The notes under the pieces were generated by a model that saw only the letters and a list, made by a program, of their open reading frames with translations, did not search any database and was not told the origin of the DNA. This document shows positions 25,271-54,668 of a DNA stretch of 64,000 nt, in pieces. A program made the position numbers and the translations under genes. The stretch's first letter is position 1. The number at the start of each line of letters is the position of its first letter. The stretch lies in NCBI RefSeq assembly GCF_032444005.1, contig NC_091285.1, positions 33,232,001 through 33,296,000 on the forward strand. The letters run 5' to 3'. This stretch comes from Ranitomeya imitator. Lineage: Eukaryota.

Positions 25271-28200
25271 ATGGACGTCCAGAGTTTGGCTTCCAGCTTG
25301 AATAATCTTGCTGCTAAGGTTCAAAATATACAAGATTTTGTTGTACATACGCCTATGTCTGAACCTAGAATTCCTATTCCAGAGTTTTTTTCTGGAAATA
25401 GATCTAGTTTTCTGAATTTTAGGAACAATTGCAAGTTGTTTCTTTCCTTGAAATCTCGCTCCTCTGGAGACCCTGCTCAGCAGGTCAAGATTGTTATATC
25501 TTTCCTGCGGGGTGACCCTCAGAATTGGGCATTTGCATTGGCACCAGGGGATCCTGCGTTGCTCAATGTGGATGCGTTTTTTCTGGCATTGGGTTTGCTC
25601 TATGAGGAACCTAACCTAGAGATTCAGGCTGAAAAAGCTTTATTGGCTCTCTCCCAGGGGCAAGATGAAGCAGAAATATATTGTCAGAAATTTCGGAAAT
25701 GGTCGGTGCTTACTCAGTGGAATGAGTGCGCTCTGGCTGCAAAATTCAGAGATGGCCTTTCTGAGGCCATTAAAGATGTTATGGTGGGGTTCCCGGCGCC
25801 TACAGGTCTGAATGAGTCCATGACTATGGCTATTCAGATTGATCGGCGTTTACGGGAGCGCAAACCTGTGCACCAATTGGCGGTGTCTTCTGAACAGGCA
25901 CCTGAGATAATGCAATGTGATAGAATTCAGTCCAGAAGTGAACGGCAAAATTATAGGTGGAAAAATGGATTGTGTTTTTATTGTGGTGATTCAGCTCATG
26001 TTATATCAGCATGCTCTAAACGCACAAAAAAGGTTGATAAGTCTGTTGCCATTGGTACTTTACAGTCTAAGTTCATTCTGTCTGTGACTCTGATTTGTTC
26101 ATTATCATCCATTTCCGTCGATGCCTATGTAGATTCAGGCGCTGCCCTGAGTCTTATGGTTTGGTCATTTGCCAATCGCTGTGGGTTTAGTCTGGAACCT
26201 CTGGAAGTTCCTATTCCTTTGAAAGGAATTGACTCTACACCTTTGGCTATGAATAAACCTCAGTACTGGACACAAGTGACCATGCCTATGACTCCCGTTC
26301 ATCAGGAGGTGATTCGCTTCCTGGTACTGTATAATTTACATGATGTCTTAGTGCTTGGTCTGCCATGGTTACAAACTCATAACCCAGTCCTGGACTGGAA
26401 AACAATGTCTGTGTTAAGCTGGGGATGTCAGGGGGTTCATGATGATGCATCTCCGATTTCTATCGCTTCATCTACTCCTTCTGAGGTTCCGGTATTTTTG
26501 TCTGATTATCGGGAGGTTTTTGAGGAGCCTAAGCTCAGTTCGCTTCCTCCTCACAGGGATTGCGATTGTGCTATAGATTTGATTCCTGGCAGTAAATTCC
26601 CTAAAGGTCGTTTGTTCAATCTGTCAGTGCCAGAGCATACTGCTATGCGGAATTATGTTAAGGAGTCCTTGGAAAAGGGACATATCCGTCCATCTTCGTC
26701 CCCTTTGGGAGCAGGTTTTTTTTTCGTGGCCAAAAAAGATGGTTCCTTGAGGCCTTGCATAGATTATCGTCTTTTGAATAAGATTACAGTCAAATATCAG
26801 TATCCTTTGCCATTGTTGACTGATTTGTTCGCTCGCATTAAGGGGGCTAAATGGTTCACTAAGATTGATCTTCGGGGTGCGTATAATCTTGTGCGGATAA
26901 GGCAGGGTGATGAGTGGAAAACCGCATTTAATACGCCTGAGGGCCATTTCGAGTATTTGGTGATGCCTTTTGGACTTTCTAATGCTCCTTCTGTCTTCCA
27001 GTCTTTTATGCACGATATTTTCCGTGAATATCTGGATAAATTTATTATCGTGTATTTGGATGATGTTTTGGTTTTTTCTGATGACTGGGAGTCTCATGTT
27101 CAGCAGGTCAGGAAGGTGTTTCAGGTCCTGCGGGCCAATTCTTTGTTTGTAAAGGGTTCTAAATGTCTCTTTGGAGTCCAGAAGATTTCATTTTTGGGGT
27201 ATATTTTTTCCCCTTCTACTATTGAGATGGATCCCGTCAAGGTTCAGGCTATTTGTGACTGGACGCAGCCTACATCTCTTAAGAGTCTACAGAAGTTCTT
27301 GGGCTTTGCTAATTTTTATCGTCGCTTCATAACTAATTTTTCTAGTGTTGTTAAGCCTTTGACGGATTTGACTAAGAAGGGTGCTGATGTTACTGATTGG
27401 TCTCCTGCGGCTGTGGAGGCCTTTCAGGAACTTAAGCGCCGGTTTTCTTCTGCTCCTGTGTTGCGTCAGCCAGATACGTCGCTTCCTTTTCAGGTTGAGG
27501 TTGATGCTTCCGAGATCGGAGCGGGGGCGGTTTTGTCACAGAGAAGCTCCGATGGCTCAGTGATGAAGCCATGTGCGTTCTTTTCTAGAAAATTTTCGCC
27601 CGCTGAACGGAATTATGATGTTGGTAATCGGGAGCTTTTGGCCATGAAGTGGGCATTTGAGGAGTGGCGTCATTGGCTTGAGGGTGCTAGACATCGTGTG
27701 GTGGTCTTGACTGATCACAAAAATCTGATGTACCTTGAGTCTGCCAAGCGTCTGAATCCTAGACAGGCTCGTTGGTCACTGTTTTTCTCCCGTTTCAATT
27801 TTGTGGTTTCATACCTGCCAGGTTCAAAGAATGTGAAGGCAGATGCTCTTTCTAGGAGTTTTGTGCCTGACTCCCCTGGAAATTCTGAGCCCACTGGTAT
27901 CCTTAGGGATGGGGTGATTTTGTCGGCTGTCTCCCCAGACTTGCGACGTGCTTTGCAGGAGTTTCAGGCGGATAAACCTGATCGTTGTCCGCCGGAAAGA
28001 CTGTTTGTTCCGGATAATTGGACCAGTAGAGTCATCTCCGAGGTCCATTCTTCTGTGTTGGCAGGTCATCCTGGAATATTTGGTACTAGAGACTTGGTGG
28101 CCAGGTCTTTTTGGTGGCCTTCCTTGTCGAGGGATGTGCGTTCTTTCGTGCAATCTTGTGGAGTTTGCGCTCGGGCTAAGCCTTGCTGTTCTCGGGCCAG

Positions 28201-29338
28201 TGGATTGTTGTCACCTTTGCCTATCCCGAAGAGGCCTTGGACGCACATTTCCATGGACTTTATTTCGGATCTCCCTGTCTCTCAAAAAATGTCCGTCATA
28301 TGGGTTGTGTGTGACCGCTTTTCTAAGATGGTTCATCTGGTATCCTTGCCTAAGTTACCTTCCTCCTCTGAGTTGGTCCCTCTGTTTTTTCAAAACGTGG
28401 TCCGTTTGCATGGCATTCCGGAGAACGTCGTTTCTGACAGGGGATCCCAGTTTGTGTCTAGATTTTGGCGGACGTTCTGTGCTAAGATGGGCATTGATTT
28501 GTCCTTTTCGTCTGCATTCCATCCCCAGACGAATGGCCAGACGGAACGAACTAATCAGACTTTAGAAACTTATTTAAGGTGTTTTGTTTCTGCTGATCAA
28601 GATGACTGGGTTTCCTTTTTGCCGCTTGCCGAGTTTGCCCTTAATAATCGGGCTAGTTCTGCTACCTTGGTTTCTCCTTTCTTTTGTAATTCGGGGTTTC
28701 ATCCTCGTTTTTCCTCTGGTCAGGTGGAGCCTTCTGAGTGTCCTGGAGTGGACATGGTGGTGGATAGGTTGCATCAGATTTGGAGTCATGTGGTGGACAA
28801 TTTGAAGTTGTCCCAGGAGAGGGCTCAGCAGTTTGCTAATCGCCGTCGCCGCGTGGGTCCTCGACTTCTTGTTGGGGACTTGGTGTGGTTGTCTTCTCGT
28901 TTTGTTCCTATGAAGGTCTCTTCTCCTAAGTTCAAGCCTCGGTTCATCGGTCCCTATAGGATCTTGGAAATTCTTAATCCTGTGTCGTTTCGTTTGGATC
29001 TCCCGGCATCGTTTGCTATTCATAATGTGTTCCATCGGTCGTTGTTGCGGAAGTATGAGGTACCTGTTGTTCCTTCGCTTGAGCCTCCTGCTCCGGTGCT
29101 GGTGGAGGGTGAATTGGAGTATGTTGTGGAGAAGATCTTGGATTCTCGTGTTTCCAGACGGAAACTCCAGTATTTGGTCAAGTGGAAGGGTTATGGTCAG
29201 GAGGATAATTCTTGGGTGATTGCCTCTGATGTTCATGCTGCCGATTTGGTCCGTGCTTTTCATAGGGCTCATCCTGGTCGCCCTGGTGGTTCTCGTGAGG
29301 GTTCGGTGACCCCTCCTCAAGGGGGGGTACTGTTGTGA
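25271..29338 (+). CDS. Gag-PR-RT-RNaseH-IN-chromodomain polyprotein
   Basis: CCHC knuckle CFYCGDSAHVISAC; protease VDSGA; RT VYLDD; RNaseH VDAS/TDHKNL; integrase HHCC, MDF, SDRG, GQTER, GPY; chromodomain YVVEKILDSR...YLVKWKGYGQEDNSW. Confidence 0.98.
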   Translation: MDVQSLASSLNNLAAKVQNIQDFVVHTPMSEPRIPIPEFFSGNRSSFLNFRNNCKLFLSLKSRSSGDPAQQVKIVISFLRGDPQNWAFALAPGDPALLNVDAFFLALGLLYEEPNLEIQAEKALLALSQGQDEAEIYCQKFRKWSVLTQWNECALAAKFRDGLSEAIKDVMVGFPAPTGLNESMTMAIQIDRRLRERKPVHQLAVSSEQAPEIMQCDRIQSRSERQNYRWKNGLCFYCGDSAHVISACSKRTKKVDKSVAIGTLQSKFILSVTLICSLSSISVDAYVDSGAALSLMVWSFANRCGFSLEPLEVPIPLKGIDSTPLAMNKPQYWTQVTMPMTPVHQEVIRFLVLYNLHDVLVLGLPWLQTHNPVLDWKTMSVLSWGCQGVHDDASPISIASSTPSEVPVFLSDYREVFEEPKLSSLPPHRDCDCAIDLIPGSKFPKGRLFNLSVPEHTAMRNYVKESLEKGHIRPSSSPLGAGFFFVAKKDGSLRPCIDYRLLNKITVKYQYPLPLLTDLFARIKGAKWFTKIDLRGAYNLVRIRQGDEWKTAFNTPEGHFEYLVMPFGLSNAPSVFQSFMHDIFREYLDKFIIVYLDDVLVFSDDWESHVQQVRKVFQVLRANSLFVKGSKCLFGVQKISFLGYIFSPSTIEMDPVKVQAICDWTQPTSLKSLQKFLGFANFYRRFITNFSSVVKPLTDLTKKGADVTDWSPAAVEAFQELKRRFSSAPVLRQPDTSLPFQVEVDASEIGAGAVLSQRSSDGSVMKPCAFFSRKFSPAERNYDVGNRELLAMKWAFEEWRHWLEGARHRVVVLTDHKNLMYLESAKRLNPRQARWSLFFSRFNFVVSYLPGSKNVKADALSRSFVPDSPGNSEPTGILRDGVILSAVSPDLRRALQEFQADKPDRCPPERLFVPDNWTSRVISEVHSSVLAGHPGIFGTRDLVARSFWWPSLSRDVRSFVQSCGVCARAKPCCSRASGLLSPLPIPKRPWTHISMDFISDLPVSQKMSVIWVVCDRFSKMVHLVSLPKLPSSSELVPLFFQNVVRLHGIPENVVSDRGSQFVSRFWRTFCAKMGIDLSFSSAFHPQTNGQTERTNQTLETYLRCFVSADQDDWVSFLPLAEFALNNRASSATLVSPFFCNSGFHPRFSSGQVEPSECPGVDMVVDRLHQIWSHVVDNLKLSQERAQQFANRRRRVGPRLLVGDLVWLSSRFVPMKVSSPKFKPRFIGPYRILEILNPVSFRLDLPASFAIHNVFHRSLLRKYEVPVVPSLEPPAPVLVEGELEYVVEKILDSRVSRRKLQYLVKWKGYGQEDNSWVIASDVHAADLVRAFHRAHPGRPGGSREGSVTPPQGGVLL

Positions 29339-29871: not shown

Positions 29872-30418
29872 GGTGTCATAATTGACGACTCTCCATTATT
29901 AATCTGGCTTAATGTCACCTTACAAGGTGACATTAACCCTTCATTACCCTATATCCCACCGCTACACGGGAATGGGAAGAGAGTGGCCAAGTGCCAGAAC
30001 AGGCGCATCTTCCAGATGTGCCTTTTCTTGGGTGGCTGGGGGCAGATGTTTTTAGCCAGGGGGGGGGGGGGGCAAAAACTGTGGACCCTCTCCAGGCTAT
30101 TAATATCTGCCCTCAGTCACTGTCTTTACTACTCTGGCGGAGAAAATTGCGTGGGAGCCCACGCCACTTTTTTCCGCCATTTAACCCTTAAATTTAATAG
30201 CTAGAGCGCCCAAATTTTGCACATACACACTACTAACATTAGTAGTGTGGAATATGCAAAAAAAAGGGGATATGAGATGGTTTACTGTATGTAACCAGGT
30301 CTCATATCATGTCGGGTTTAGGAAGGAGATAGCAAAAGCCGGTAATTGAATTATCGGCTTTAAAGCTATCTCGCGCTGAATGAAATATTAATATATATAC
30401 ATATATGTGTCTACTGAC

Positions 30419-30449
<31 letters not shown>

Positions 30450-31349
30450 TATATAGTCGGTATATATGTTGTTACAATTTTTTGAGCACATGGATCCATT
30501 GTATATCCGTATGTCAGTTTTGCAAGCCTGCGAGAAAATCTCGCAGTACGGATGCCATACGGAGGATGCCATGCGCAAAATACGCTGACACACCCTGCCT
30601 ACGGAGGAGATACGGACCACTATTTTGGGGACTTTTCTGCGTATTACGGCCGTAAATTACGGACCGTATTGTCTTACGCCGAGTTTGACGCCGGCCTTAC
30701 AGGTGCAGGTGGAAAGGAACATTCCACTCTCCCAATGGCGCGCCCGGGACATGATCGCGGGATGCCGATGGGTTGTTATGACAGTCAGGGGTGTGACGAT
30801 GACACCCGTGCCTGTCATTACGATCCTCCTATGAACATCGGTCTGTAGTCGGCATTCATAGGAAATCATGATTTTTGCTATACATAGAAGTGCTGATGCC
30901 CTGCTGTATACAGTACAAATGATCAGATGATCGCAGTTTCAAGTCCCCTAAGGGGACTATTAAATACAGTAAAAATTTTACAAATATAAAAAATATTTTT
31001 TTTTAAAAGTTCAAACCACCCCCTTATTAAAAATAAAATATAAAAAATACAGATTTGGCATCACTGTGTTCAGAAATGTACGATCTATCAAAATATGAAA
31101 TAAAAGAATTTGATCGGTAAACGGCGTAACGAAAAAAAAATCAAAACGCCAAAAATTAAGTTTTTCTTGCCCACTGCAAAATTGCAATTAAATGCAATAA
31201 AAGGCCTTCAAAACATCGTATCTACCCCAAAATGGTATCAGTGAGAATGTCAGTTCAGGGCAGAAAAAATAAGCCCTCAACCAGCCCCAGATGCCGAAAA
31301 ATGAAAATGTCCCCGTACACTATATGGTTCAATGCCATTACTCAGGTAC

Positions 31350-31589
31350 CTGGGAAGGTTTCGCTGTGTTTCGCTTTCAGTTTTCGGGCCTCGTCATAGT
31401 AGGGTTCCTTCTGTTCCTCACTCAGCTTGCTCCACTCCAGGCCTAACTGGACGCTGATGTCGGCATTACTGGCTCTAGGGTTGGTTCTCGCCAGTGCCTG
31501 ACGGTGGATTCTGGCAAATACCATGAAAGCGTTCATCGGCCGTTTGATGTACCCATTTTTTTCATAAGTGATTGGTTTGAAGGACATTC
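31350..31589 (-). CDS. SOX30: SOX30 exon 2 (HMG box)
   Basis: Acceptor TTTCATCGCAG, donor CCAG|GTACCT, 240 nt phase 1/1; [58 protein letters not shown] has the SOX30-specific [14 protein letters not shown] signature. Confidence 0.95.
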
Positions 31590-31799
31590 CTGCGATGAAA
31601 CATGTTAAAATATATACGTGACTACAGCACTACAAATTAAAGGGATCCTACACTTACTTTATACAATATAAGTTCGTCGACAGATTTTAAATAAAATCCC
31701 TTTAAATTATTCCTAAATACAAAGTTTATAGGGTCGAAGCGAATCGATTAGCAGGGTCCGGTCCATCAACCACGTCAGAAATGGACGTGAGAACCGGAT

Positions 31800-32860
31800 C
31801 AGCATCCGTGGCTCTTCTATTGATTGGCCAGCCTGGCACATGGGCATCACAGCGACCAGGCTGGCTAATCAAAGGAAGAGCAGCAAATGTAGTGGTGTCT
31901 CTCAGGTTTCTTCCCAGCGACCACATCATCAATCTGTGGCCACTAGATGGGAACCCTGAGAGCCCCGACATCATCCGTGGCTCTTCTATTGATTAGCTGG
32001 CCTGGCACATGGGTATCACACTGACCAGGCTGGCTAATCAAAAGGAAGAGCAGCAAATGTAGTGGTGTCTCTCAGGTTTCCTGTCCAGCGACCACATCAT
32101 CAATCTGTGGCCACTAGATGGGAACCCTGAGAGCCCCTTCATCATCCGTGGCTCTTCTATTGATTAGCTAGCCTGGCACATGGGTATCACACTGACCAGG
32201 CTGGCTAATCAAAGGAAGAGCAGCAAATGTAGTGGTGGCTCTCAGGTTTCCTGTCCAGCGACCACATCATCAATCTGTGTCCACTAGATGGGATCCCTGC
32301 GAGCCCCTTCATCATCCGTGGCTCTTCTATTGATTAGCTAGCTTGGCACATGGGCATCACACTGACCTGGCTGGGTAATCAAAGGAAGAGCCGCGAATGC
32401 AGTGGTGGCTCTCAGAGTTCCCGTCCAGCAGCCACATCATCAATCTGTGACCACTGGACGGGAACCCTGAAAGCCCCATCATCATCCATGGCTCTTCTAT
32501 TGATTAGCTGGCCTGGCACATGGGCATCACACTGACCTGGCTGGCTAATCAAAGGAAGAGCCGCGAATGCAGTGGTGGCTCTCAGGGTTCCCATCCAGCC
32601 GCCACATCATCAATCTGTGGCCACTGGATGGGAACCCTAAGGGCCACCACAGCAGCTGTGGCTCTTCTATTGATTAGCTGGCCTGGCACATGGGCATCAC
32701 ACCGACCAGGATGGCTAATCAAAGGAAGAGCCACAAATGTAGCGGTGGCTCTCAGGGTTCCCATCCAGCAGCCACATCATCAATCTGTGGCCACTGGATG
32801 GTAACCCTGAGAGTCGCCTCAGCATTCGTGGCTCTTCTATTGATTAGCCGGCCCGGCACA
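31800..32860. repeat. 170-bp tandem repeat (about 6.3 units), each unit with two internal hairpins
   Basis: GTGGCTCTTCTATTGATT recurs at 31808, 31977, 32148, 32318, 32488, 32658, 32828. Confidence 0.95.
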
Positions 32861-33883
32861 ATGTCTCCAAGGCGATGGGATCCCAGCATTTACAATGTAG
32901 GATAATTGATTTTATATTTTAATAGACCGAACTTTATAGACAAGTGCACTTGTTTGTTTGTTTTTTTAAATTTCATGATTTTTGGATTGGGAAAAAAAGT
33001 TGTAATTGAAGATTTTGGGGATTTTAATTCTTTGCTTAATTTTTAACTATTGTTTACATTTTTTTTAGTTACCCCCCTTTCCTCTCTACTTTAGTATAAG
33101 GTGAAATTTATGATCTCCTCTCTGATTGGTGAATTGTGAATAAGGGGTGATGGACACAATAACGGACACCCAATTCCTGCTTAGAAACACAGCAGCATCT
33201 AAAGTAGTTAAAGGGGTTGTCCAACCTTAGGCTACAAGTCTGCAGTCACTCTATGTGACTTCAGACTTGTGAATCCTCACAGTATACACAGTACACACTT
33301 GTCAGGATTCTCTGATGCCAGGCAGTCATGTTACCGCTAGTATGTGATTTGCCTACTTCCGGTCACATTCAGACTAAACGTTTCCGGCTGTGCATGTCTA
33401 GAAGGTATGTGACCGCATGTTTGCAAATCACATACTTACGCCAGCACCGGAGAATCCTCATGGTGGGAGGATTCACAAACCTGCACTCACATAGAGACTT
33501 GTAGTCTAAGGCCGGCGTCACACTATCGAGTTTTATGGACGTATGAGCGCAGAAAATACGGATTGCACACGGCCCAATGCTTCTCTATGCCCCTGCTTCT
33601 ATCTGCCGTATTTAACTGATCCGTATTATACGGTCTTGTACGGCCGTAGAAAATCGCAGCATGCTGCGTTTGTCACCGTATTCTGCAAAAAAAACACCAA
33701 TGAAATTCTATGGGGGCGAGAAAAATACGGATTACACACGGACCAGCAGTGTGACTTGCGAGAAATACGCAGCGCTGTTCTATAGAAAAGCCGGCAATTC
33801 AGTGCGGTGTACAGTAAAATCACACTGACAGCTTACAGTAGAATAGGTAGAATAAATGTGTACACATAGAATAGGGGTATATA

Positions 33884-35489
33884 CAGTGGGGCAAAAAAGT
33901 ATTTAGTGAGTCAGCAATAGTGCAAGTTCCACCACTTAAAAAGATGAGAGGCGTCTGTAATTTACATCATAGGTAGACCTCAACTATGGGAGACAAACTG
34001 AGAAAAAAAAATCCAGAAAATCACATTGTCTGTTTTTTTAACATTTTATTTGCATATTATGGCGGAAAATAAGTATTTGGTCAGAAACAAAATTTCATCT
34101 CAATACTTTGTAATATATCCTTTGTTGGCAATGACAGAGGTCAAACGTTTTCTGTAAGCCTTCACAAGGTTGCCACACACTGTTGTTGGTATGTTGGCCC
34201 ATTCCTCCATGCAGATCTCCTCTAGAGCAGTGATGTTTTTGGCTTTTCGCTTGGCAACACAGACTTTCAACTCCCTCCAAAGGTTTTCTATAGGGTTGAG
34301 ATCTGGAGACTGGCTAGGCCACTCCAGGACCTTGAAATGATTCTTACGAAGCCACTCCTTCGTTGCCCTGGCGGTGTGCTTTGGATCATTGTCATGTTGA
34401 AAGACCCAGCCACGTTTCATCTTCAATGCCCTTGCTGATGGAAGGAGGTTTGCACTCAAAATCTCACGATACATGGCCCCATTCATTCTTTCATGTACCC
34501 GGATCAGTCGTCCTGGCCCCTTTGCAGAGAAACAGCCCCAAAGCATGATGTTTCCACCACCATGCTTTACAGTAGGTATGGTGTTTGATGGATGCAACTC
34601 AGTATTCTTTTTCCTCCAAACACGACAAGTTGTGTTTCTACCAAACAGTTCCAGTTTGGTTTCATCAGACCATAGGACATTCTCCCAAAACTCCTCTGGA
34701 TCATCCAAAGGCTCTCTAGCAAACTTCAGACGGGCCCGGACATGTACTGGCTTAAGCAGTGGGACACGTCTGGCACTGCAGGATCTGAATCCATGGTGGC
34801 GTAGTGTGTTACTTATGGTAGGCCTTGTTACATTGGTCCCAGCTCTCTGCAGTTCATTCACTAGGTCCCCCCGCGTGGTTCTGGGATTTTTGCTCACCGT
34901 TCTTGTGATCATTCTGACCCCACGGGGTGGGATTTTGCGTGGAGCCCCAGATCGAGGGAGATTATCAGTGGTCTTGTATGTCTTCCATTTTCTAATTATT
35001 GCTCCCACTGTTGATTTCTTCACTCCAAGCTGGTTGGCTATTGCAGATTCAGTCTTCCCAGCCTGGTGCAGGGCTACAATTTTGTTTCTGGTGTCCTTTG
35101 ACAGCTCTTTGGTCTTCACCATAGTGGAGGTTGGAGTCAGACTGTTTGAGGGTGTGCACAGGTGTCTTTTTATACTGATAACAAGTTTAAACAGGTGCAA
35201 TTACTACAGGTAATGAGTGGAGGAAAGAGGAGACTCTTAAAGAAGAAGTTACAGGTCTGTGAGAGCCAGAAATCTTGATTGTTTGTTTCTGACCAAATAC
35301 TTATTTTCCACCATAATATGCAAATAAAATGTTAAAAAAACAGACAATGTGATTTTCTGGATTTTTTTTTCTCAGTTTGTCTCCCATAGTTGAGGTCTAC
35401 CTATGATGTAAATTACAGACGCCTCTCATCTTTTTAAGTGGTGGAACTTGCACTATTGCTGACTGACTAAATACTTTTTTGCCCCACTG
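33884..35489 (-). mobile_element. Tc1/mariner (DD34E) transposon copy A, ~210-bp TIRs, TA TSD
   Basis: TA|CAGTGGGGCAAAAAAGTATTT ... AAATACTTTTTTGCCCCACTG|TA; 1606 bp. Confidence 0.97.
34100..35122 (-). CDS. Tc1 transposase, 340 aa, open frame
   Basis: [10 protein letters not shown]..., [15 protein letters not shown]-34 [10 protein letters not shown]. Confidence 0.95.
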
Positions 35490-35709
35490 TATATATATAT
35501 ATATATATATACCGTATATATGTGTCAGTGAGACACCTATATATACATATATATATCAAGATAATGTCTAGAAAATTCCTTGGAGAAGGGAATGGCACTA
35601 GGATATCAATTGCAGCTTTATATTCCTCGCACTCATTACATGGATCGCTCACACATGCGGTATGCAAAAAGCCACTGAGATGCGGTGCTCAGCTAATGAG
35701 GTAATACCA

Positions 35710-35993
35710 ATCTTCATAAACAAAAGTTGAAAAAGTAGCGGCACTCACCAGTCTGCTCAAAATTATGTCTTTAATGTGTCTTCAATCCATAGTACAGATT
35801 ATGCGGACACAATGCAGGTAGTTACGAGGGTGCGGGGAGTGAAGGGGGACATGTCCCCCTTCACTCCCCGCACCCTCGTAACTACCTGCATTGTGTCCGC
35901 ATAATCTGTACTATGGATTGAAGACACATTAAAGACATAATTTTGAGCAGACTGGTGAGTGCCGCTACTTTTTCAACTTTTGTTTATGAAGAT
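35710..35993. repeat. Perfect spacer-less 284-bp palindrome
   Basis: Centre GGGGGACATGTCCCCC (axis between 35851 and 35852); arms match out to A35710/T35993. Confidence 0.95.
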
Positions 35994-36866
35994 ACATATA
36001 TATATATATATATATATATTTAATTCAGCGCTAGATAGCAGAGAAGCCATTAATTCAATTGCCGGCTTTTGCTATCTCCTTCCTAAACCCGACATGATAT
36101 GAGACATGGTTTACATACAGTAAACCATCTCATATCCCTTCTTTTATTACATATTTCTCTTTAGTAATGGATGAAGTTTCTGTGTGTAAAATTTGGGGTC
36201 TCTAGCTATTAAATTAAAGGGTTAAATCCCGGAATAAATTGGCGTGGGCTCCCGCGCAATTTTCTCCGCCAGAGTAGTAAAGCCAGTGACTGAGGGCAGA
36301 TATTAATAGCCTGGAGAGGGTCCACGGTTATTGCCCCCCCCCCCCCCCCCCTGGCTAAAAACATCTGCCCCCAGCCACCCCAGAAAAGGCACATCTGGAA
36401 GATGCGCCTATTCTGGCACTTACCCTCTCTCTTCCCATTCCCGTGTAGCGGTGGGATATGGGGATATACGGATGACACATGGATAAATTTGTGCGCAAAA
36501 ATTGCATCCATTATATATAACGTATATATTTTTTATTTTTAATGATATTTATTTTATTTGAAAAATAAAGGGAACCACCTGTCGGAAACTTCTACGCCCA
36601 TTAAAAGATAAGTTGCTCCGAGTCCCTTATTCCACACAGACTGGAGCGAAGTACAAAAAATGCCAGCAATTGTCTTGCTGCAAGGACCAACGAGCAACGT
36701 AAAAGGATCAAACCGTTTAAATGCCGCAGCCAGTGATGGACAGTGGCGTCTAAAGGGGTTCACAAGCCATGACGGGCGATGGCCGGGTTTTTTGGGGGGG
36801 TTTCTCAGATAGGATGTGTGAAAGGCTGAAATGTCCTCACGCTGCGCCACGTACGGGCGGTCTCAC

Positions 36867-37197
36867 CTGACGCGGCAGGAGGTAGCGTGAGGGGGACATT
36901 TTCGGTCTCAAGCTTCACCAATGGCTCCATCACTAGAGGGTCGGACGCGCTCCCAAATGATGGGAAGAGGGGAAGGTGGGCTTGTATCCTCGGGGGAAGA
37001 GTCACGGGAAGTGTTAGGTGTTCGGCCAGACCCACGGTCAGATCCTGGTCTAGGGTCTCGCCGATCCCCCCGGATTGTAGGTCACAAGAGTCCATGGCGC
37101 TTTGGACGATGTCCGCACTGTAGGTTGGGGAGTTCTTTTCTGATTTTATAGAACATAAGGGGAAGTCTTTCCTGTTTTGGTCTCTTTTGCTCTCCAT
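36867..37197 (-). CDS. SOX30: SOX30 exon 1 (coding part)
   Basis: ATG 37197, donor TCAG|GTGAGA (phase 1); MEPLVKLETENVPLTLPPAAS|G matches human LLEPSVKIETKDVPLTVLPSDA|G; upstream in-frame TAG; five exons sum to 1443 nt = 480 aa + stop. Confidence 0.85.
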
Positions 37198-37324
37198 GTT
37201 GGTTCCTCTGCAGGTGACCAGCTCTGCCTCTGTGCTGTCTGTATCACCACCACTCCTCTTTACAGCACAGATGTTATCTGTCTTCTTTCCATCACTAATG
37301 TCCTCCTAACCAAAACGGTCTTAA

Positions 37325-37445
37325 CCGCATTTAAACAGTAAATGCACGCCTCCTAGCAGCCTAGCGTTCATATTGGCTCTGCGAGACGTCCATCATCTCT
37401 GCCACCCAATAGGAGGGCAGAACGCGAGCAGGCCACGCCCCCATA
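37325..37445 (-). promoter_or_regulatory. Putative SOX30 promoter: TTTAAA, two CCAAT boxes, GC box
   Basis: TTTAAA ~37330-37335, ATTGG 37372-37376, CCAAT 37406-37410, CCACGCCCCC 37433-37442; CpG-rich. Confidence 0.55.
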
Positions 37446-37689
37446 CTGAACTGTCCATTATCTACCGCACCACTCGGACCAGTGAACGCCGGCGCGCATG
37501 AAGGGAAAATGGGCGGAGCTACGAGTCTTCGCTCCGCGCTCACTGCGGAGTCACCAAATTCAGTTACCATGGAGACCCCTTATCATTTCCCTCATAAACT
37601 GTGTCCCAAGCCTATAACACATCAGTATGTGTCACCACTCACCATACACCACTGGCACCAGTACAGCCTGGCACTGTAAGAAAGCCAAA

Positions 37690-38210
37690 TGGCTAGATAC
37701 AGTATATAGACTATATACCCACATATACATACAGTATGTAGACTATATACCCACATATATATACAGTATGTAGACTATATACCCACACATATATGTATAT
37801 ATATACACAGTATATAGACTATGTACCCACATATACATACAGTATGTAGACTATATACCCACATATATATACAGTATGTAGACTATATACCCACATATAT
37901 ATACAGTATGTAGACTATATACCCACATATATATACAGTATGTAGACTATATACCCACATATATATACAGTATGTAGACTATATACCCACATATACATAC
38001 AGTATGTAGACTATATACCCACATATATATACAGTATGTAGACTATATACCCACATATATATACAGTATGTAGACTATATACCCACATATATATACAGTA
38101 TATAGACTATGTACCCACATATACATACAGTATGTAGACTATATACCCACATATATATACAGTATGTAGACTATATACCCACATATACATACAGTATGTA
38201 GACTATATAC

Positions 38211-38264
<54 letters not shown>

Positions 38265-38330
38265 TACATACCCACATATATACAGTATATAGACTATATA
38301 CCCACATATATACAGTATATATACACACAT
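37690..38330. repeat. ~32-bp minisatellite (CAGTATGTAGACTATATACCCACATATATA)n with (TA)n
   Basis: About 18 tandem units directly before Tc1 copy B. Confidence 0.95.
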
Positions 38331-38331
38331 A

Positions 38332-39938
38332 CAGTGGGGAAAAAAAGTATTTAGTCAGTCAGCAATAGTGCAAGTTCCACCACTTAAAAAGATGAGAGGC
38401 GTCTGTAATTTACATCATAGGTAGACCTCAACTATGGGAGACAAACTGAGAAAAAAAAATCCAGAAAATCACATTGTCTGTTTTTTTAACAATTTATTTG
38501 CATATTATGGTGGAAAATAAGTATTTGGTCAGAAACAAACAATCAAGATTTCTGGCTCTCACAGACCTGTAACTTCTTTTTTAAGAGTCTCCTCTTTCCT
38601 CCACTCATTACCTGTAGTAATGGCACCTGTTTAAACTTGTTATCAGTATAAAAAGACACCTGTGCACACCCTCAAACAGTCTGACTCCAAACTCCACTAT
38701 GGTGAAGACCAAAGAGCTGTCAAAGGACACCAGAAACAAAATTGTAGCCCTGCACCAGGCTGGGAAGACTGAATCTGCAATAGCCAACCAGCTTGGAGTG
38801 AAGAAATCAACAGTGGGAGCAATAATTAGAAAATGGAAGACATACAAGACCACTGATAATCTCCCTCGATCTGGGGCTCCACGCAAAATCCCACCCCGTG
38901 GGGTCAGAATGATCACAAGAACGGTGAGCAAAAATCCCAGAACCACGCGGGGGGACCTAGTGAATGAACTGCAGAGAGCTGGGACCAATGTAACAAGGCC
39001 TACCATAAGTAACACACTACGCCACCATGGACTCAGATCCTGCAGTGCCAGACGTGTCCCACTGCTTAAGTCAGTACATGTCCGGGCCCGTCTAAAGTTT
39101 GCTAGAGAGCATTTGGATGATCCAGAGGAGTTTTGGGAGAATGTCCCATGGTCTGATGACACCAAACTGGAACTGTTTGGTAGAAACACAACTTGTCGTG
39201 TTTGGAGGAAAAAGAATACTGAGTTGCATCCATCAAACACCATACCTACTGTAAAGCATGGTGGTGGAAACATGATGCTTTGGGGCTGTTTCTCTGCAAA
39301 GGGGCCAGGACGACTGATCCGGGTACATGAAAGAATGAATGGGGCCATGTATCGTGAGATTTTGAGTGCAAACCTCCTTCCATCAGCAAGGGCATTGAAG
39401 ATGAAACGTGGCTGGGTCTTTCAACATGACAATGATCCAAAGCACACCGCCAGGGCAACGAAGGAGTGGCTTCGTAAGAAGCATTTCAAGGTCCTGGAGT
39501 GGCCTAGCCAGTCTCCAGATCTCAACCCTATAGAAAACCTTTGGAGGGAATTGAAAGTCTGTGTTGCCAAGCGAAAAGCCAAAAACATCACTGCTCTAGA
39601 GGAGATCTGCATGGAGGAATGGGCCAACATACCAACAACAGTGTGTGGCAACCTTGTGAAGACTTACAGAAAACGTTTGACCTCTGTCATTGCCAACAAA
39701 GGATATATTACAAAGTATTGAGATGAAATTTTGTTTGTGACCAAATACTTATTTTCCACCATAATATGCAAATAAAATGTTAAAAAAACAGACAATGTGA
39801 TTTTCTGGATTTTTTTTTCTCAGTTTGTCTCCCATAGTTGAGGTCTACCTATGATGTAAATTACAGACGCCTCTCATCTTTTTAAGTGGTGGAACTTGCA
39901 CTATTGCTGACTGACTAAATACTTTTTTTGCCCCACTG
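38332..39938 (+). mobile_element. Tc1/mariner (DD34E) transposon copy B, ~210-bp TIRs, TA TSD
   Basis: TA|CAGTGGGGAAAAAAAGTATTT ... AAATACTTTTTTTGCCCCACTG|TA; 1607 bp; inverted relative to copy A. Confidence 0.97.
38699..39721 (+). CDS. Tc1 transposase, 340 aa, open frame
   Basis: Same protein as copy A with 8 aa differences; [21 protein letters not shown]. Confidence 0.95.
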
Positions 39939-41745
39939 TATATATGTATATATACAGTATATAGCTCCCTTAGTGTTTTTACGTCCTTTTGTGATTTTTT
40001 ATGGTGGTCCACAGTCTGTCTTGGGGCGTGAGCACCGTGGCTGGTTGTGTTACGGGTGTGGGAACTGTGGATGGGACTAAAACAGAAGGAAACGACTAGG
40101 ACTGTAACATCGGACTGTTTGAAGTTTGTTACCATGGATACACATAGGTCGGTATGGGAGCTGCGGGAAAGACATTTTTAATAATGAAAAGTGGGCTACT
40201 ATTTTTTTTATTGATGGTCTATCCTCAAGATAGGCAATCAGTACCTGATTGGTGGGGGTGCTAAGGATAGGCCATCAATAAAAATGTAATGGCCAACCCG
40301 GCTATATGCGCACGTTGGGGATTTTGATGCATTTACGCGGCGTTTTTGGCCACACGAATTCGCATCAAATCCGCAATGTAGTGCACAGCCAATGTCAGTC
40401 TATGTGAAATTGACATTTGTTGTGCACATGCTGCGGAAAATAACGAGCGGAATCGCAGAGTTTTTTTTCCCCGCAGCATGTCAATTCTTTTGGCGGATCT
40501 GCAGCGTTTCTGCACCCACTGACTTCCATTGAGTCAGGCACATCCACCGCAAAACCGCAGGTGTAGAAAAGATCTGGGGTCTAGCTGCGGATGAAACGCT
40601 GCAGATCGGGAGGGAGTGTGTGGGCGGAGCTATGTGCGTGTATGTGTGTGTGCCGGTTTCTGCGTGAATCTGTGTCTGTGTGCGGGTGTGTGTGCGTGTC
40701 TGTGTAAGGCAGCCATTGTCTGACACAGAACATGCAACATATAACATAGAGTACATACTCACCAACCACCTATTCCCCGAAGCCCTCGATCTCCTGTAAT
40801 AAAAATAACATAATAAACCAACCTATACTTACCTTTCGGCCCATGTCAGCGCTCTACAGGGGCCCCGCGATGAACTGACAGCGGGGGTAGTCCTCCGTGA
40901 TGTATATTCCTCCTCCGCCGCCGCCGGGAGAGAGGTCACTTAAGTTCATTTTGTCGCCGGCAACGCTGTGTGAGAAAATTCCCACGCAGCATTGCCATAA
41001 AGCGAGAGAATGAACTCAGGTAACCTCTTCAGCGATGCACTGCAGGAGCCATTGTCTCCCGTCAGTGCATCACAGGAGGCTTACAGAGCGGTGACATCAC
41101 CCGATGTCCCTGTTCTATAGGGGAGATCGTCGTGGGACACTCGTTATTAATTGGACTACGTCGGACAGGGAGTATACGGTTGGTTTATTTTTTTTTTGCA
41201 GGTGATTGATGGTGGTTGTAAGTATGGTGAAATTAAGAATATTAAAATACTTTTTTTCTGGCTGTGTCTTTTTTAACTCGTTCACTACTATAGGATTAGT
41301 AATGGATAGGCGTCTTATTGACGCCTCTCCATTACTAACCGGGCTTAATGTCACCTTACATTAGCAAGGTGACATTAACTCCTTATTACCCCATATCCCA
41401 CCACTACAGGGGAGTGGGAAGAGAGGGGCTAAGTGCCGGAATTGGTGCCATTTCTGGGGCGGCTGGGAGCTGGTATTTGTAGCTGGGGGGCAATATCCAT
41501 AGCCCCTCTAGGCTATGAATATCAGCCCGCAGCTGTCTGCGTAGCCTTTCTGGTCCCCCTATTTTAATAGCCAGTAAAGGCTATGCAGACAGCTGCCGGC
41601 TGATATTCATAGCCTGGGAAGCTCCATCGTTATTAACCCCTTCCCAGGCTACAAACATCAGCCCCCAGTCGCTGGCTTTCCCACTCTGGACTTGAAAATT
41701 GTGCGGGAGCCCACGCAATTTTTTGTTCCATTTTTTGTAAATTAA

Positions 41746-42075
41746 AGGGAACCTGTCACCCCGAAAATCGCGGGTGAGGTAAGCCCACCGGCATCAGGGG
41801 CTTATCTACAGCATTCTGTAATGCTGTAGATAAGCCCCCGATGTTACCTGAAAGAGGAGAAAAAGAGGTTATATTATACTCACCCAGGGGCGGTCCCGCT
41901 GCTGGTCCGGTCGGATGGGTGTCTCCGGTCCGCTGCGGCGCCTCCCATCTTCATTACAAGACGTCCTCTTCAGGTAACATCGTGGGCTTATCTACAGCAT
42001 TACAGAATGCTGTAGATAAGCCCCTGATGCCGGTGGGCTTACCTCACCTGCGATTTTCGGGGTGACAGGTTCCCT
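41746..42075. mobile_element. TTAA-flanked MITE (T2/Kolobok-like)
   Basis: TTAA|AGGGAACCTGTCACCCCGAAAATCG ... CGATTTTCGGGGTGACAGGTTCCCT|TTAA. Confidence 0.88.
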
Positions 42076-49360: not shown

Positions 49361-49562
49361 ACATTTTATAGGAGTTTATTCTGCATTTATTGCTGATGGA
49401 CTCGTTGACATCACGTCCATAGCTTAATGACTCCACAAGAAGAGACAGACATCAATCTTCCTCGGAATGGAAGAAAAATGTAACCTTTCTTCCCTCCCCT
49501 CCCAAAAAAAGGCACCACATCTGTCTGCTGGTCATGTGCGGTATTACAGCCACTTCTGTAAG

Positions 49563-51013
49563 GCTAAATGTGGTGCCAATATTCAAAAAGGGCTCTAAAA
49601 GTGAACCTGGAAATTATAGGCCAGTAAGTCTAACCTCTATTGTTGGTAAAATATTTGAAGGGTTTCTGAGGGATGTTATTCTGGATTATCTCAATGAGAA
49701 GAACTGTTTAACTCCATATCAGCATGGGTTTATGAGAAATCGCTCCTGTCAAACCAATCTAATCAGTTTTTATGAAGAGGTAAGCTATAGGCTGGACCAC
49801 GGTGAGTCATTGGACGTGGTATATCTCGATTTTTCCAAAGCGTTTGATACCGTGCCGCACAAGAGGTTGGTACACAAAATGAGAATGCTTGGTCTGGGGG
49901 AAAATGTGTGTAAATGGGTTAGTAACTGGCTTAGTGATAGAAAGCAGAGGGTGGTTATAAATGGTATAGTCTCTAACTGGGTCGCTGTGACCAGTGGGGT
50001 ACCGCAGGGGTCAGTATTGGGACCTGTTCTCTTCAACATATTCATTAATGATCTGGTAGAAGGTTTACACAGTAAAATATCGATATTTGCAGATGATACA
50101 AAACTATGTAAAGCAGTTAATACAAGAGAAGATAGTATTCTGCTACAGATGGATCTGGATAAGTTGGAAACTTGGGCTGAAAGGTGGCAGATGAGGTTTA
50201 ACAATGATAAATGTAAGGTTATACACATGGGAAGAAGGAATCAATGTCACCATTACACACGGAATGGGAAACCACTGGGTAAATCTGACAGGGAGAAGGA
50301 CTTGGGGATCCTAGTTAATGATAAACTTACCTGGAGCAGCCAGTGCCAGGCAGCAGCTGCCAAGGCAAACAGGATCATGGGGTGCATTAAAAGAGGTCTG
50401 GATACACATGATGAGAGCATTATACTGCCTCTGTACAAATCCCTAGTTAGACCGCACATGGAGTACTGTGTCCAGTTTTGGGCACCGGTGCTCAGGAAGG
50501 ATATAATGGAATTAGAGAGAGTACAAAGGAGGGCAACAAAATTAATAAAGGGGATGGGAGAACTACAATACCCAGATTAGCGAAATTAGGATTATTTAGT
50601 CTAGAAAAAAGACGACTGAGGGGCGATCTAATAACCATGTATAAGTATATAAGGGGACAATACAAATATCTCGCTGAGGATCTGTTTATACCAAGGAAGG
50701 TGACGGGCACAAGGGGGCATTCTTTGCGTCTGGAGGAGAGAAGGTTTTTCCACCAACATAGAAGAGGATTCTTTACTGTTAGGGCAGTGAGAATCTGGAA
50801 TTGCTTGCCTGAGGAGGTGGTGATGGCGAACTCAGTCGAGGGGTTCAAGAGAGGCCTGGATGTCTTCGTGGAGCAGAACAATATTGTATCATACAATTAG
50901 GTTCTGTAGAAGGACGTAGATCTGGGGATTTATTATGATGGAATATAGGCTGAACTGGATGGACAAATGTCTTTTTTCGGCCTTACTAACTATGTTACTA
51001 TGTGTTACTATGT
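49563..51013 (+). mobile_element. 5'-truncated CR1-type LINE with frameshift near 50575
   Basis: VVPIFKKG...NYRPVSLTS, YLDFSKAFD, GVPQGSVLGP, FADDTK; frame breaks at YPD and resumes (LAKLGLFSLEKRRLRGD); 3' tail (TTACTATG)n at ~50985-51013. Confidence 0.93.
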
Positions 51014-54054: not shown

Positions 54055-54668
54055 TTAGGTGTAGATAACGAACACTTTGGGAATGTTCCCAGTGTGTTCC
54101 GTCTCCATGTGGTCTACGAGGGTAATCTTGTCTTCCTTCTTGGCAGGCCGTTCGGTAGACACAGAAGCTACGCGATGTAGTTGTTGACTTAGACTTTTAA
54201 GACTTATATCCAGGTTATTAAAGGCGTGGAGCATGAAGACACCAAGGATGATGACGAGGAATCCGCAAACTGCACCTACGCCATCCAGTGGAGACATAGA
54301 CACCCATTCCTTAAAGAGGATGAGGGACGTAGTGATCACCACGGTGGTGAATAAGACGTAGTAGATGGGAAAGACCAAGGAGGTGTTGAACACGTCCAGG
54401 GATTTGTTGAGGTAGTTCACTTGTGTGACCACCGAGATGATCAGGATGGGGATGAGGACCCATGGAAGAGGATGTTGGACAACTGGTAGACCGGCGAGAA
54501 GACCCTTCACAGCGATGCCCAGGCCCTTCACAGAAGACACGGAGAAGGCGCCAAGGAGAGAACATATTGCCAGGTAAACAAGGATGTTTTGGTGGCCATA
54601 ACGGGGCGAGAGAATGAAAATCAGGACCAGTGAGAAGATGAGCAGCACGCTGATGTAGACAATGAAGC
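54055..54668 (-). CDS. NIPAL4: NIPAL4 exon 6 (last), NIPA-family Mg2+ transporter
   Basis: Acceptor TTAACAAACAG phase 1; NILVYLAICSLLGAFSVSSVKGLG, QVNYLNKSLDVFNTSLVFPIYYV; C-terminal PKVFVIYT* resembles NIPAL4 PKVFIIHS. Confidence 0.92.

What the first reader, a model, noticed from the sequence alone, without database searches (positions are those of the whole stretch)
33884..39938. Two intact, near-identical Tc1 transposons in inverted orientation bracket the SOX30 promoter and exon 1: composite transposon or invertible cassette
Seen: copies A (33884-35489, -) and B (38332-39938, +) each have full TIRs, TA TSDs and open DD34E ORFs differing at 8/340 aa; between them lie only SOX30 exon 1, its promoter, a perfect palindrome and a minisatellite (2.8 kb). 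Established: transposases can act on ends from neighbouring copies, and recombination between inverted repeats inverts the enclosed DNA. Inference: the 6-kb unit could excise or move a germline promoter plus exon, or flip it and silence SOX30; the arrangement may also be a product of local hopping.
Basis: partly seen in the sequence, partly recalled or inferred. Interest (0 to 1): 0.7.

Follow-up and report, generated by a model that had tools for sequence, protein, structure and literature searches.

The report
Tc1 pair flanking frog SOX30 exon
Two real, nearly identical copies of a very abundant poison-frog "jumping gene" sit in opposite orientation on either side of the first exon and promoter of the male-fertility gene SOX30, but they look like ordinary, slowly decaying insertions and nothing shows that the pair moves or flips the gene piece.

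Summary
Copy A (33884-35489, minus) and copy B (38332-39938, plus) are full-length Sleeping-Beauty-type Tc1 elements. They are 98.8% identical, each has TA on both sides, 208-nt inverted repeats and an open 340-aa DD34E gene.

The functional reading has no support.
- SOX30 is at its native locus, with all five exons colinear, so the cassette did not arrive as a unit.
- Both copies sit in TA-rich targets typical of this family.
- The eight protein differences are four private changes per copy at positions invariant in about 120 relatives. Substitutions are 8 non-synonymous to 2 synonymous, which is neutral decay.
- The two outer ends a composite would use are both right repeats, each with private changes in transposase-binding repeats.
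- The family is enormously abundant, so a few such brackets are expected by chance.

One shared change (R288C) hints at a common source or an early local hop. Inversion and presence/absence could not be tested, because only short contigs were available. This scan has met the same family elsewhere in this genome. Verdict: an ordinary new instance of a known kind.

The parts
33884..35489 (-). Tc1 copy A, 1606 nt, full length. It lies in SOX30 intron 1 and has TA on both sides.
34100..35122 (-). Copy A transposase ORF, 340 aa with D153/D244/E279. Private changes are L112F, H138P, K261N and T322A. R288C is shared with copy B.
33884..34091 (.). Right IR of copy A, which is the outer end of the pair. 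Private changes sit in the outer DR core (33908) and beside the inner DR (34063).
35282..35489 (.). Left IR of copy A, the inner end facing exon 1. It carries none of the A/B differences where the other three IRs disagree with it.
35710..35993 (.). Perfect spacer-less palindrome with 2 x 142-nt arms. Its sequence has about 15-40 times single-copy k-mer depth in the same species.
35990..36630 (.). Hyper-abundant interspersed repeat in intron 1. A second copy lies at 29947-30412 (89% identity). Its k-mer depth exceeds that of the Tc1 family.
36867..37197 (-). SOX30 coding exon 1, with ATG at 37197 and donor CAG|GTGAGA after 36867.
37198..37690 (-). 5' UTR and promoter-like region. It is CpG-rich and carries GC boxes and CCAAT/ATTGG motifs. 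No transcript evidence was obtained.
   Evidence: sequence read directly; contig 37169-37353 in run X7, of unknown library kind
37697..38331 (.). 32-bp minisatellite of about 19 units with a (TA)n core. Its last partial unit continues at 39939-39965, so copy B inserted into it.
38332..39938 (+). Tc1 copy B, 1607 nt, full length. It lies about 1.1 kb upstream of the SOX30 ATG and has TA on both sides.
38699..39721 (+). Copy B transposase ORF, 340 aa. Private changes are P125S, L150P, E154D (the last two flank catalytic D153) and I192M. R288C is shared with copy A.
39730..39938 (.). Right IR of copy B, the other outer end of the pair. Private changes are a 1-nt insertion in the terminal A-run (39923) and a change in the inner DR core (39737).
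31348..31593 (-). SOX30 HMG-box exon (exon 2). It is the downstream partner of exon 1 across the 5.3-kb intron 1 that holds copy A.

Best explanation
These are two separate canonical cut-and-paste insertions of one very abundant, fish-like IR/DR Tc1 family. The host genome is a poison frog, most likely Ranitomeya imitator. The insertions sit in two TA-rich targets at the native SOX30 locus. Copy A entered a (TA)n tract in intron 1. Copy B entered a TA-rich minisatellite about 1.1 kb upstream of the start codon.

Since insertion, both copies have drifted neutrally, at about 0.56% per copy. They are passive passengers. SOX30 keeps its normal exon order and orientation. The inverted, bracketing layout is a coincidence of high TE density, possibly helped by a common source copy or an early local hop.

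The anatomy, the neutral decay and the native gene order are shown. That the pair is inert is inferred.
For: **Canonical, separate insertions**
- Each copy has its own TA on both sides and its own distinct flanks.
- A is followed by (TA)11.
- B splits the minisatellite, whose last partial unit resumes at 39939-39965.

**Native locus**
- A named SOX-30 protein (P0123) maps to five exons in order on the minus strand: 37209-36832, 31593-31348, 23414-23292, 21277-20840 and 17265-16882.
- A NIPA-family exon lies at 54055-54648.

**Neutral decay**
- All 8 amino-acid differences are private to one copy, at positions invariant in 7 Ranitomeya and about 110 fish homologs.
- Of the 10 ORF differences, 8 are non-synonymous and 2 synonymous. 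The expected non-synonymous fraction is 77%.
- An ORF taking 5 hits stays open 80% of the time by chance.

**No homogenised tract**
- The 19 differences are spread along the element.

**Abundance**
- Only short family contigs were laid on the elements. Their summed k-mer depth is 2-8 x 10^5, against 13-21 for the single-copy stretch 36631-37630, in two species.
- R. imitator has 504,231 Tc1-IS630-Pogo pieces, 4.37% of the genome (PMC8457190, a paper marked retracted).
- Oophaga pumilio has 39,303 copies of the salmon-like Tc1-3_SSa (PMC6278860).
- A rough calculation gives 2-9 exon-1 brackets per genome for 2-4 x 10^4 copies.
- Earlier notes of this scan report clusters of the same family elsewhere in this genome.
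Against: - A and B share one derived residue, R288C, that none of 7 other Ranitomeya copies has. They may therefore not be fully independent draws.
- There are two copies within 6 kb and none in the other 58 kb of the window.
- No long read or population sample was available, so rare inverted, excised or empty-site alleles are not excluded.
- The activity of either transposase was not and cannot be tested here.
Confidence: 0.8

Rival explanations
1. Sister copies by local hopping. One copy, or a copy of the same nearby source, re-inserted a few kb away, as Sleeping-Beauty-type elements often do. The pair would then be related by descent, not by chance.
For: - R288C is shared by A and B and absent from 7 other Ranitomeya copies.
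- None of the 18 A/B substitutions is a CpG decay, so a parallel CpG hit in both copies is unlikely.
- SB shows local hopping, with 30-60% of re-insertions on the donor chromosome (PMC5715130).
- There are two copies in 6 kb and none in the other 58 kb.
Against: - Only 1 shared change stands against 4+4 private amino-acid changes, so any hop was early and is not ongoing.
- C288 also occurs in 11 of 113 fish homologs, so it may mark a subfamily or recur.
- Cut-and-paste hopping leaves the donor site empty unless it is repaired from the sister chromatid.
- The frequency of C288 among copies of this genome could not be measured.
Confidence: 0.25
2. Invertible cassette. Homologous recombination between the 1.6-kb inverted copies flips the promoter plus exon 1 in some germ lines or individuals, which switches SOX30 off.
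For: - The 1.6-kb arms are 98.8% identical and only 2.8 kb apart.
- Recombination between inverted repeats inverts the enclosed DNA (established knowledge; cf. PMC3004938 and PMC6278893, listed).
Against: - The window shows exon 1 in the productive orientation.
- The older R. imitator annotation joins exon 1 to the HMG exon (P0122).
- There is no long identical tract that would point to conversion between the copies.
- Loss of Sox30 sterilises male mice (PMC5732304), so an inverted allele would be selected against.
- No read evidence exists either way, because contigs cannot cross a 1.6-kb repeat.
Confidence: 0.05
3. Natural 'sandwich' composite transposon. Transposase acts on the two outermost ends (33884 and 39938) and can excise or move the 6-kb unit carrying the SOX30 promoter and exon 1.
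For: - The layout is the same as the engineered SB sandwich configuration, which raises cargo capacity (PMC5715130).
- All four ends have TA and complete IR/DRs.
- Open transposase ORFs exist here and the family is very abundant.
Against: - Both outer ends are right IRs. In SB the transpositional enhancer (HDR) is in the left IR (PMC5224488).
- Each outer IR has two private changes in or beside its DRs, whereas A's inner left IR has none.
- IR/DR elements enforce ordered synapsis, which suppresses aberrant end usage (PMC5224488).
- Each single element is a shorter substrate with its own complete pair of ends.
- The cassette sits at the native locus and did not arrive as a unit.
- The exon-1 contigs of run X1 are unbranched and at the same low depth as their neighbours.
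Confidence: 0.03
4. Assembly artefact. One copy would be a false duplication or a mis-join.
For: - Repeat-rich 6-7 Gb genomes are hard to assemble.
- A perfect 284-bp palindrome lies nearby, which is sometimes a long-read chimera signature.
Against: - There are 19 differences between the copies.
- All four flanks are different.
- Each copy has an intact TA at both ends.
- B's flanks are two halves of one minisatellite.
- Contigs of another sample of the same species confirm 36466-37726, with 2 differences.
Confidence: 0.02

Closest known systems
Sleeping Beauty / IR-DR subgroup of Tc1 (salmonid-type Tc1-like elements)
   Same: - The element is 1.6 kb with TA target duplication.
- Its roughly 210-nt IRs each hold two transposase-binding direct repeats.
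- The transposase is 340 aa with a PAI/RED paired-like HTH and DD34E at D153/D244/E279.
- The catalytic domain aligns end to end with SB100X (5cr4, E 5e-81).
   Different: - This is a natural frog family, not the reconstructed SB.
- Protein identity is 86-89% to many teleost copies and 95-97% to R. imitator copies.
- An HDR-like enhancer in the left IR was not looked for.
- Activity is unknown.
Fish-like Tc1 families of poison frogs (e.g. Tc1-3_SSa-like elements in Oophaga pumilio, Rogers et al. 2018, PMC6278860)
   Same: - It is a high-copy, low-divergence Tc1 in a dendrobatid genome.
- It has unusually close relatives in salmonids, catfish and other teleosts, the pattern interpreted as fish-frog horizontal transfer.
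   Different: - I could not test whether this family is the RepBase entry Tc1-3_SSa, because RepBase is not available here.
- The paper concerns another genus.
Engineered SB 'sandwich' transposon vector (cargo flanked by two complete IR/DR elements in inverted orientation; cited in PMC5715130)
   Same: Two complete elements in inverted orientation flank a cargo of a few kb.
   Different: - The vector is designed so that only the outer ends are used, and it is supplied with active transposase.
- Here all four ends are complete.
- The outer ends are the more mutated ones and are both right IRs.
- The cargo is a resident gene's first exon at its native place.
Bacterial composite transposons (IS pairs such as IS630, IS10 or IS50 flanking cargo; definition in PMC9977792)
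   Same: Two copies of one element of the IS630/Tc1/mariner superfamily bracket unrelated DNA.
   Different: - The defining feature, movement of the pair as one unit, is not shown here.
- There is no second copy of the cargo, and the cargo is at its native locus.
TE-mediated inversions and alternative transposition (e.g. Ac/Ds in maize, PMC8225341; ectopic recombination between inverted TE copies, PMC6278893)
   Same: Nearby copies in opposite orientation are the known substrate for such rearrangements.
   Different: - No rearranged allele has been observed here.
- IR/DR elements are reported to suppress aberrant end usage (PMC5224488).

Membership tests
Tc1/mariner superfamily, Tc1 DD34E, IR/DR (Sleeping-Beauty-like) subgroup | DDE/D catalytic triad with 34 residues between the second D and the E | tested here: met
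   D153, D244 and E279 are present in both copies. The catalytic domain aligns to SB100X, 5cr4. The DDE_3 domain is found.
Tc1/mariner superfamily, Tc1 DD34E, IR/DR (Sleeping-Beauty-like) subgroup | Bipartite paired-like N-terminal DNA-binding domain | tested here: met
   PF25787 HTH_SB (E 5e-23) and PF01498 HTH_Tnp_Tc3_2 (E 1e-22) are found in both copies.
Tc1/mariner superfamily, Tc1 DD34E, IR/DR (Sleeping-Beauty-like) subgroup | TA target-site duplication | tested here: met
   TA lies at 33882-83 and 35490-91, and at 38330-31 and 39939-40.
Tc1/mariner superfamily, Tc1 DD34E, IR/DR (Sleeping-Beauty-like) subgroup | Long (about 200-230 nt) terminal IRs, each with an outer and an inner direct repeat | tested here: met
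   The IRs are 208 nt. The motif A[AT]AAGTATTT[AG]GTCAG occurs at positions 12 and 186 of the IRs.
Tc1/mariner superfamily, Tc1 DD34E, IR/DR (Sleeping-Beauty-like) subgroup | Demonstrated transposition activity of these copies | not testable with these tools
   Only indirect evidence is available. Each copy has 4 private changes plus 1 shared change at conserved positions, and substitution is neutral.
Composite (sandwich) transposon | Two copies of one element flank unrelated DNA | tested here: met
Composite (sandwich) transposon | The pair moves as one unit. This means the unit is found at a non-native site or in more than one place, or an excision product exists. | tested here: not met
   - The cargo is SOX30 exon 1 at the native, colinear locus.
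- The inner ends have their own TA.
- No joint 33883/39939 could be assayed.
- The exon-1 contigs are unbranched and at low depth.
- Absence of rare products is not shown.
Composite (sandwich) transposon | Outer ends are competent for synapsis and cleavage | tested here: inconclusive
   Both outer ends are right IRs with private changes: 33908 and 34063 in A, and 39923 and 39737 in B. The effect on binding has not been measured.
SOX30 (SoxH) gene | HMG box plus an N-terminal region homologous to named SOX-30 proteins, in one colinear gene | tested here: met
   - Exon 1 hits SOX-30 of Anomaloglossus (E 2.5e-18) and of Rhinoderma.
- The HMG exon lies at 31593-31348.
- The five exons are in order.
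- The exons were searched one by one.
SOX30 (SoxH) gene | Transcription from the proposed promoter, and germline expression | not tested
   No run on record as RNA held the stretch. One contig, 37169-37353, lies in a run of unknown kind.

The most novel reading that the evidence does not exclude
The pair is a naturally occurring 'sandwich' Tc1 unit, or an inversion switch, that is still occasionally acted on in the germ line. It would then produce frog alleles in which the SOX30 promoter and first exon are excised, moved or flipped. That would be a TE-made on/off polymorphism of a male-fertility gene.
Probability: 0.04. Interest if true: 0.65.

Novelty: new member of a known kind. Interest (0 to 1): 0.2.

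Why it matters
As it stands, this is one more example of how densely young Tc1 copies pepper poison-frog genes. Here a copy sits within about 1.1 kb of a germline gene's start codon, and the gene order is undisturbed.

The locus would matter only if rearranged alleles exist. In that case it would be a natural test of whether IR/DR elements can mobilise or invert host promoters, and a possible cause of male sterility alleles. It is also a convenient, well-defined locus for PCR assays of Tc1 activity and TE-mediated recombination in Ranitomeya.

Tried and rejected
- **The look-up of encoding contigs.** No nucleotide copies from elsewhere in the genome could be fetched, so no copy tree could be built.
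- **Read laying.** All four runs were Logan contigs, which cannot cross the 1.6-kb repeats. They gave no information on inversion, on empty sites or on whether the related species (organism B) has either insertion. The 6,000-letter limit also meant the left flank of A was left out. The many A-to-B 'skip' joints have sides of only 21-24 nt, at repeat depth. They come from other family copies or graph artefacts and are not evidence for this locus.
- **Private-allele check from family contigs.** Only one of the 19 A/B differences (34710, which gives A's H138P) was among the rows shown. There the family reads the B letter, which confirms that change as private to A. The other 18 were cut from the display.
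- **Pfam on exon 1.** It gave nothing. The word-index protein search was not used for exon 1, because its length filter hides full-length SOX30. I used the exhaustive search instead.
- **Duplication origin of the pair.** Rejected. Similarity beyond the element ends is only TA-rich low complexity.
- **Gene conversion between A and B.** There is no significant difference-free tract. The longest gap is 341 nt against a mean spacing of about 85 nt.
- **Joined SOX30 model.** Exons were handled one by one, by reference.

Full report
**1. What is there**

A repeat scan of 32000-42000 finds one 1618-nt inverted repeat with 99% complementary arms, 33888-35505 and 38316-39933. Two internal arm pairs of 204-214 nt are the terminal inverted repeats of each copy.

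Reading the sequence fixes the ends:
- Copy A is 33884-35489, from CAGTGGGG to CCCCACTG, with TA on each side.
- Copy B is 38332-39938, likewise TA-flanked.

A global alignment gives 18 substitutions and a 1-nt indel over 1606/1607 nt. No other copy or fragment of this family lies in the 64-kb window.

Each copy has an open 340-aa ORF, A at 35122-34100 on the minus strand and B at 38699-39721 on the plus strand. Both ORFs show:
- the domains HTH_SB, HTH_Tnp_Tc3_2 and DDE_3;
- D153, D244 and E279, which makes them DD34E;
- an end-to-end match of the catalytic domain to SB100X (5cr4, E 5e-81).

Each 208-nt IR has an outer and an inner copy of A[AT]AAGTATTT[AG]GTCAG, at positions 12 and 186. This is the IR/DR architecture of Sleeping-Beauty-type Tc1 elements.

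**2. The gene between them**

The 110-aa ORF 37197-36868 (minus strand) has no Pfam hit. An exhaustive search found eight relatives:
- a 240-aa Ranitomeya imitator protein that is 100% identical over residues 35-110 and continues into an HMG box;
- proteins named transcription factor SOX-30 in Anomaloglossus baeobatrachus and in Rhinoderma darwinii.

The Anomaloglossus SOX-30 maps by tblastn to five colinear minus-strand blocks: 37209-36832, 31593-31348 (HMG box), 23414-23292, 21277-20840 and 17265-16882.

Exon 1 ends at a CAG|GTGAGA donor after 36867. Upstream, 37198-37690 is CpG-rich with GC boxes and CCAAT/ATTGG motifs (read directly).

This gives the following layout:
- A lies in intron 1.
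- B lies about 1.1 kb upstream of the ATG.
- The genome is most likely R. imitator.
- A NIPA-family magnesium-transporter exon lies at 54055-54648 on the minus strand.
- SOX30 is at a normal, colinear locus.

Exons were searched one by one. I built no joined model.

**3. The rest of the interval**

The full content is:
- the perfect 284-bp palindrome at 35710-35993;
- the 32-bp minisatellite at 37697-38331;
- a repeat at about 35990-36630, with a second copy at 29947-30412, whose k-mer depth exceeds that of the Tc1 family.

The flank right of B (39939-39965) continues the minisatellite unit, so B inserted into the array. A is followed by (TA)11. Both targets are TA-rich. From my own knowledge of SB, that is the preferred target type.

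**4. Are the copies "intact"?**

I aligned both transposases with 7 Ranitomeya and about 110 fish homologs.
- Every one of the 8 A/B differences is a private change in one copy at an otherwise invariant position.
- A carries L112F, H138P, K261N and T322A.
- B carries P125S, L150P, E154D and I192M.
- B's L150P and E154D flank the catalytic D153.
- Both copies also share R288C.

In the ORF, 8 of 10 differences are non-synonymous, against 77% expected with no selection. An ORF that takes five random hits still stays open 80% of the time. Open frames here are therefore what neutral decay predicts. They are not evidence of activity.

The ends tell the same story:
- A's left (inner) IR has no private change.
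- A's right (outer) IR has one change in the outer DR core and one beside the inner DR.
- B's left (inner) IR has two changes.
- B's right (outer) IR has a 1-nt insertion between the tip and the outer DR, and a change in the inner DR core.

**5. Orientation**

The two transposase genes point away from each other. The ends facing SOX30 exon 1 are therefore both left IRs, and the outermost ends are both right IRs.

In SB the transpositional enhancer (HDR) lies only in the left IR. The IR/DR design enforces ordered synapsis, which suppresses aberrant end usage (PMC5224488).

The layout resembles the engineered SB "sandwich" vector (PMC5715130). The natural pair differs from it in three ways: it has four complete ends, its outer ends are the worse ones, and each single 1.6-kb element is the more obvious substrate.

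**6. Base rate**

- The closest proteins are R. imitator copies (95-97%) and then hundreds of teleost copies (86-89%).
- This is the fish-like pattern described for poison frogs, where one salmon-like Tc1 has 39,303 copies in Oophaga pumilio (PMC6278860).
- R. imitator is reported to have 504,231 Tc1-IS630-Pogo pieces, 4.37% of the genome (PMC8457190). That paper is marked retracted, so I use the figure only as an order of magnitude.
- Contigs of two species pile onto A and B at a summed k-mer depth of 2-8 x 10^5, against 13-21 on the single-copy stretch 36631-37630. The tool warns that this is not a copy number.
- With 2-4 x 10^4 copies in 6.8 Gb, a rough calculation gives 260-1060 pairs closer than 4.5 kb and 2-9 pairs bracketing a first exon. 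Half of each would be in inverted orientation.
- Earlier notes of this scan describe the same family elsewhere in this genome, including three copies within 19 kb. I treat these as leads only.

The arrangement is not surprising.

**7. Origin**

The shared R288C is absent from 7 other Ranitomeya copies. None of the 18 A/B substitutions is a CpG decay, so a double independent hit is unlikely. A and B probably come from the same source lineage or from an early local hop.

With 1 shared change against 4+4 private amino-acid changes, any such event preceded most of the divergence. I could not measure how common C288 is in the family.

**8. Age (inference)**

- Each copy has diverged by about 0.56%.
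- Contigs of a related species (organism B) differ from the window by about 3-8% over 36692-37211.
- Another sample of the same species differs at 2 of 505 nt.

The insertions are probably younger than the split from organism B and older than typical within-species coalescence. Insertion polymorphism is not excluded.

**9. What could not be done**

- All runs were short contigs. Inversion, excision, empty sites and orthologous-site status are therefore untested.
- No run on record as RNA held the locus, so the promoter and the exon 1 junction rest on homology and sequence motifs.

**10. Verdict**

The structural description is right. The "composite transposon or invertible cassette" idea is an untested possibility that the available evidence makes unlikely. 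This is an ordinary instance of a known kind and of low interest, unless long reads reveal rearranged alleles.

Noticed in passing
window 35710-35993: This is a perfect spacer-less 284-bp palindrome (DNA fold -183 kcal/mol, z -40). Its sequence has about 15-40 times single-copy k-mer depth in the same species and almost none in the related species. A 207-nt contig of run X11 shares 132 nt of one arm (35719-35850) but continues differently at both ends. The arm therefore also exists in a non-palindromic context. It may be a young low-copy repeat or foldback, and a long-read artefact is not excluded. An earlier scan note reports another spacer-less palindrome in this genome.
   Followed up: partly
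window 35990-36630 and 29947-30412: This is an interspersed repeat with a poly-C tract, present twice in SOX30 introns at 89% identity. Its summed k-mer depth (0.9-1.8 million) is higher than that of the Tc1 family in both species. I did not classify it.
   Followed up: no
window 25271-29338 (+): An open 1355-aa gag-pol ORF of a Ty3/Gypsy chromovirus-type retrotransposon (RT, RNase H, integrase, chromodomain) lies in SOX30 intron 2. The older R. imitator gene model P0122 appears to splice from the HMG exon into this element (27597-27520), which is probably an annotation error.
   Followed up: partly
window 36867-37197 vs P0121: SOX30 exon 1 is only 77% identical at the protein level to the R. 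variabilis homolog (XP_077136852, which has no Pfam HMG box and does not align to the HMG exon of the window), and 49% identical to Anomaloglossus SOX-30. The N-terminus evolves fast. Contigs of the related species show about 7.7% nucleotide difference over the exon.
   Followed up: no
window 37231-37630: The promoter-like region upstream of SOX30 had no contig of at least 88% likeness in the related species (organism B), although exon 1 and intron 1 next to it did. The tool warns that a hole proves nothing. It may point to promoter turnover.
   Followed up: no
window 32000-32856: A 170-bp tandem repeat of about 5 units lies in SOX30 intron 1. Each unit contains an internal inverted repeat.
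   Followed up: no
window 54055-54648 (-): An exon encodes the C-terminal half of a NIPA-family magnesium transporter (PF05653, E 5e-50). It is probably a NIPAL4-like neighbour of SOX30. LINE-type RT fragments lie at 49534-50580 and 13613-14887.
   Followed up: no
family contigs laid on 34031-35489 and 38332-39938: Many high-depth contigs join one orientation of the Tc1 to the other at nearly mirrored positions, for example 34301 to 39493. They look like foldback or internally rearranged family copies, or like de Bruijn graph artefacts. Their sides are under 31 nt, so I did not count them.
   Followed up: no
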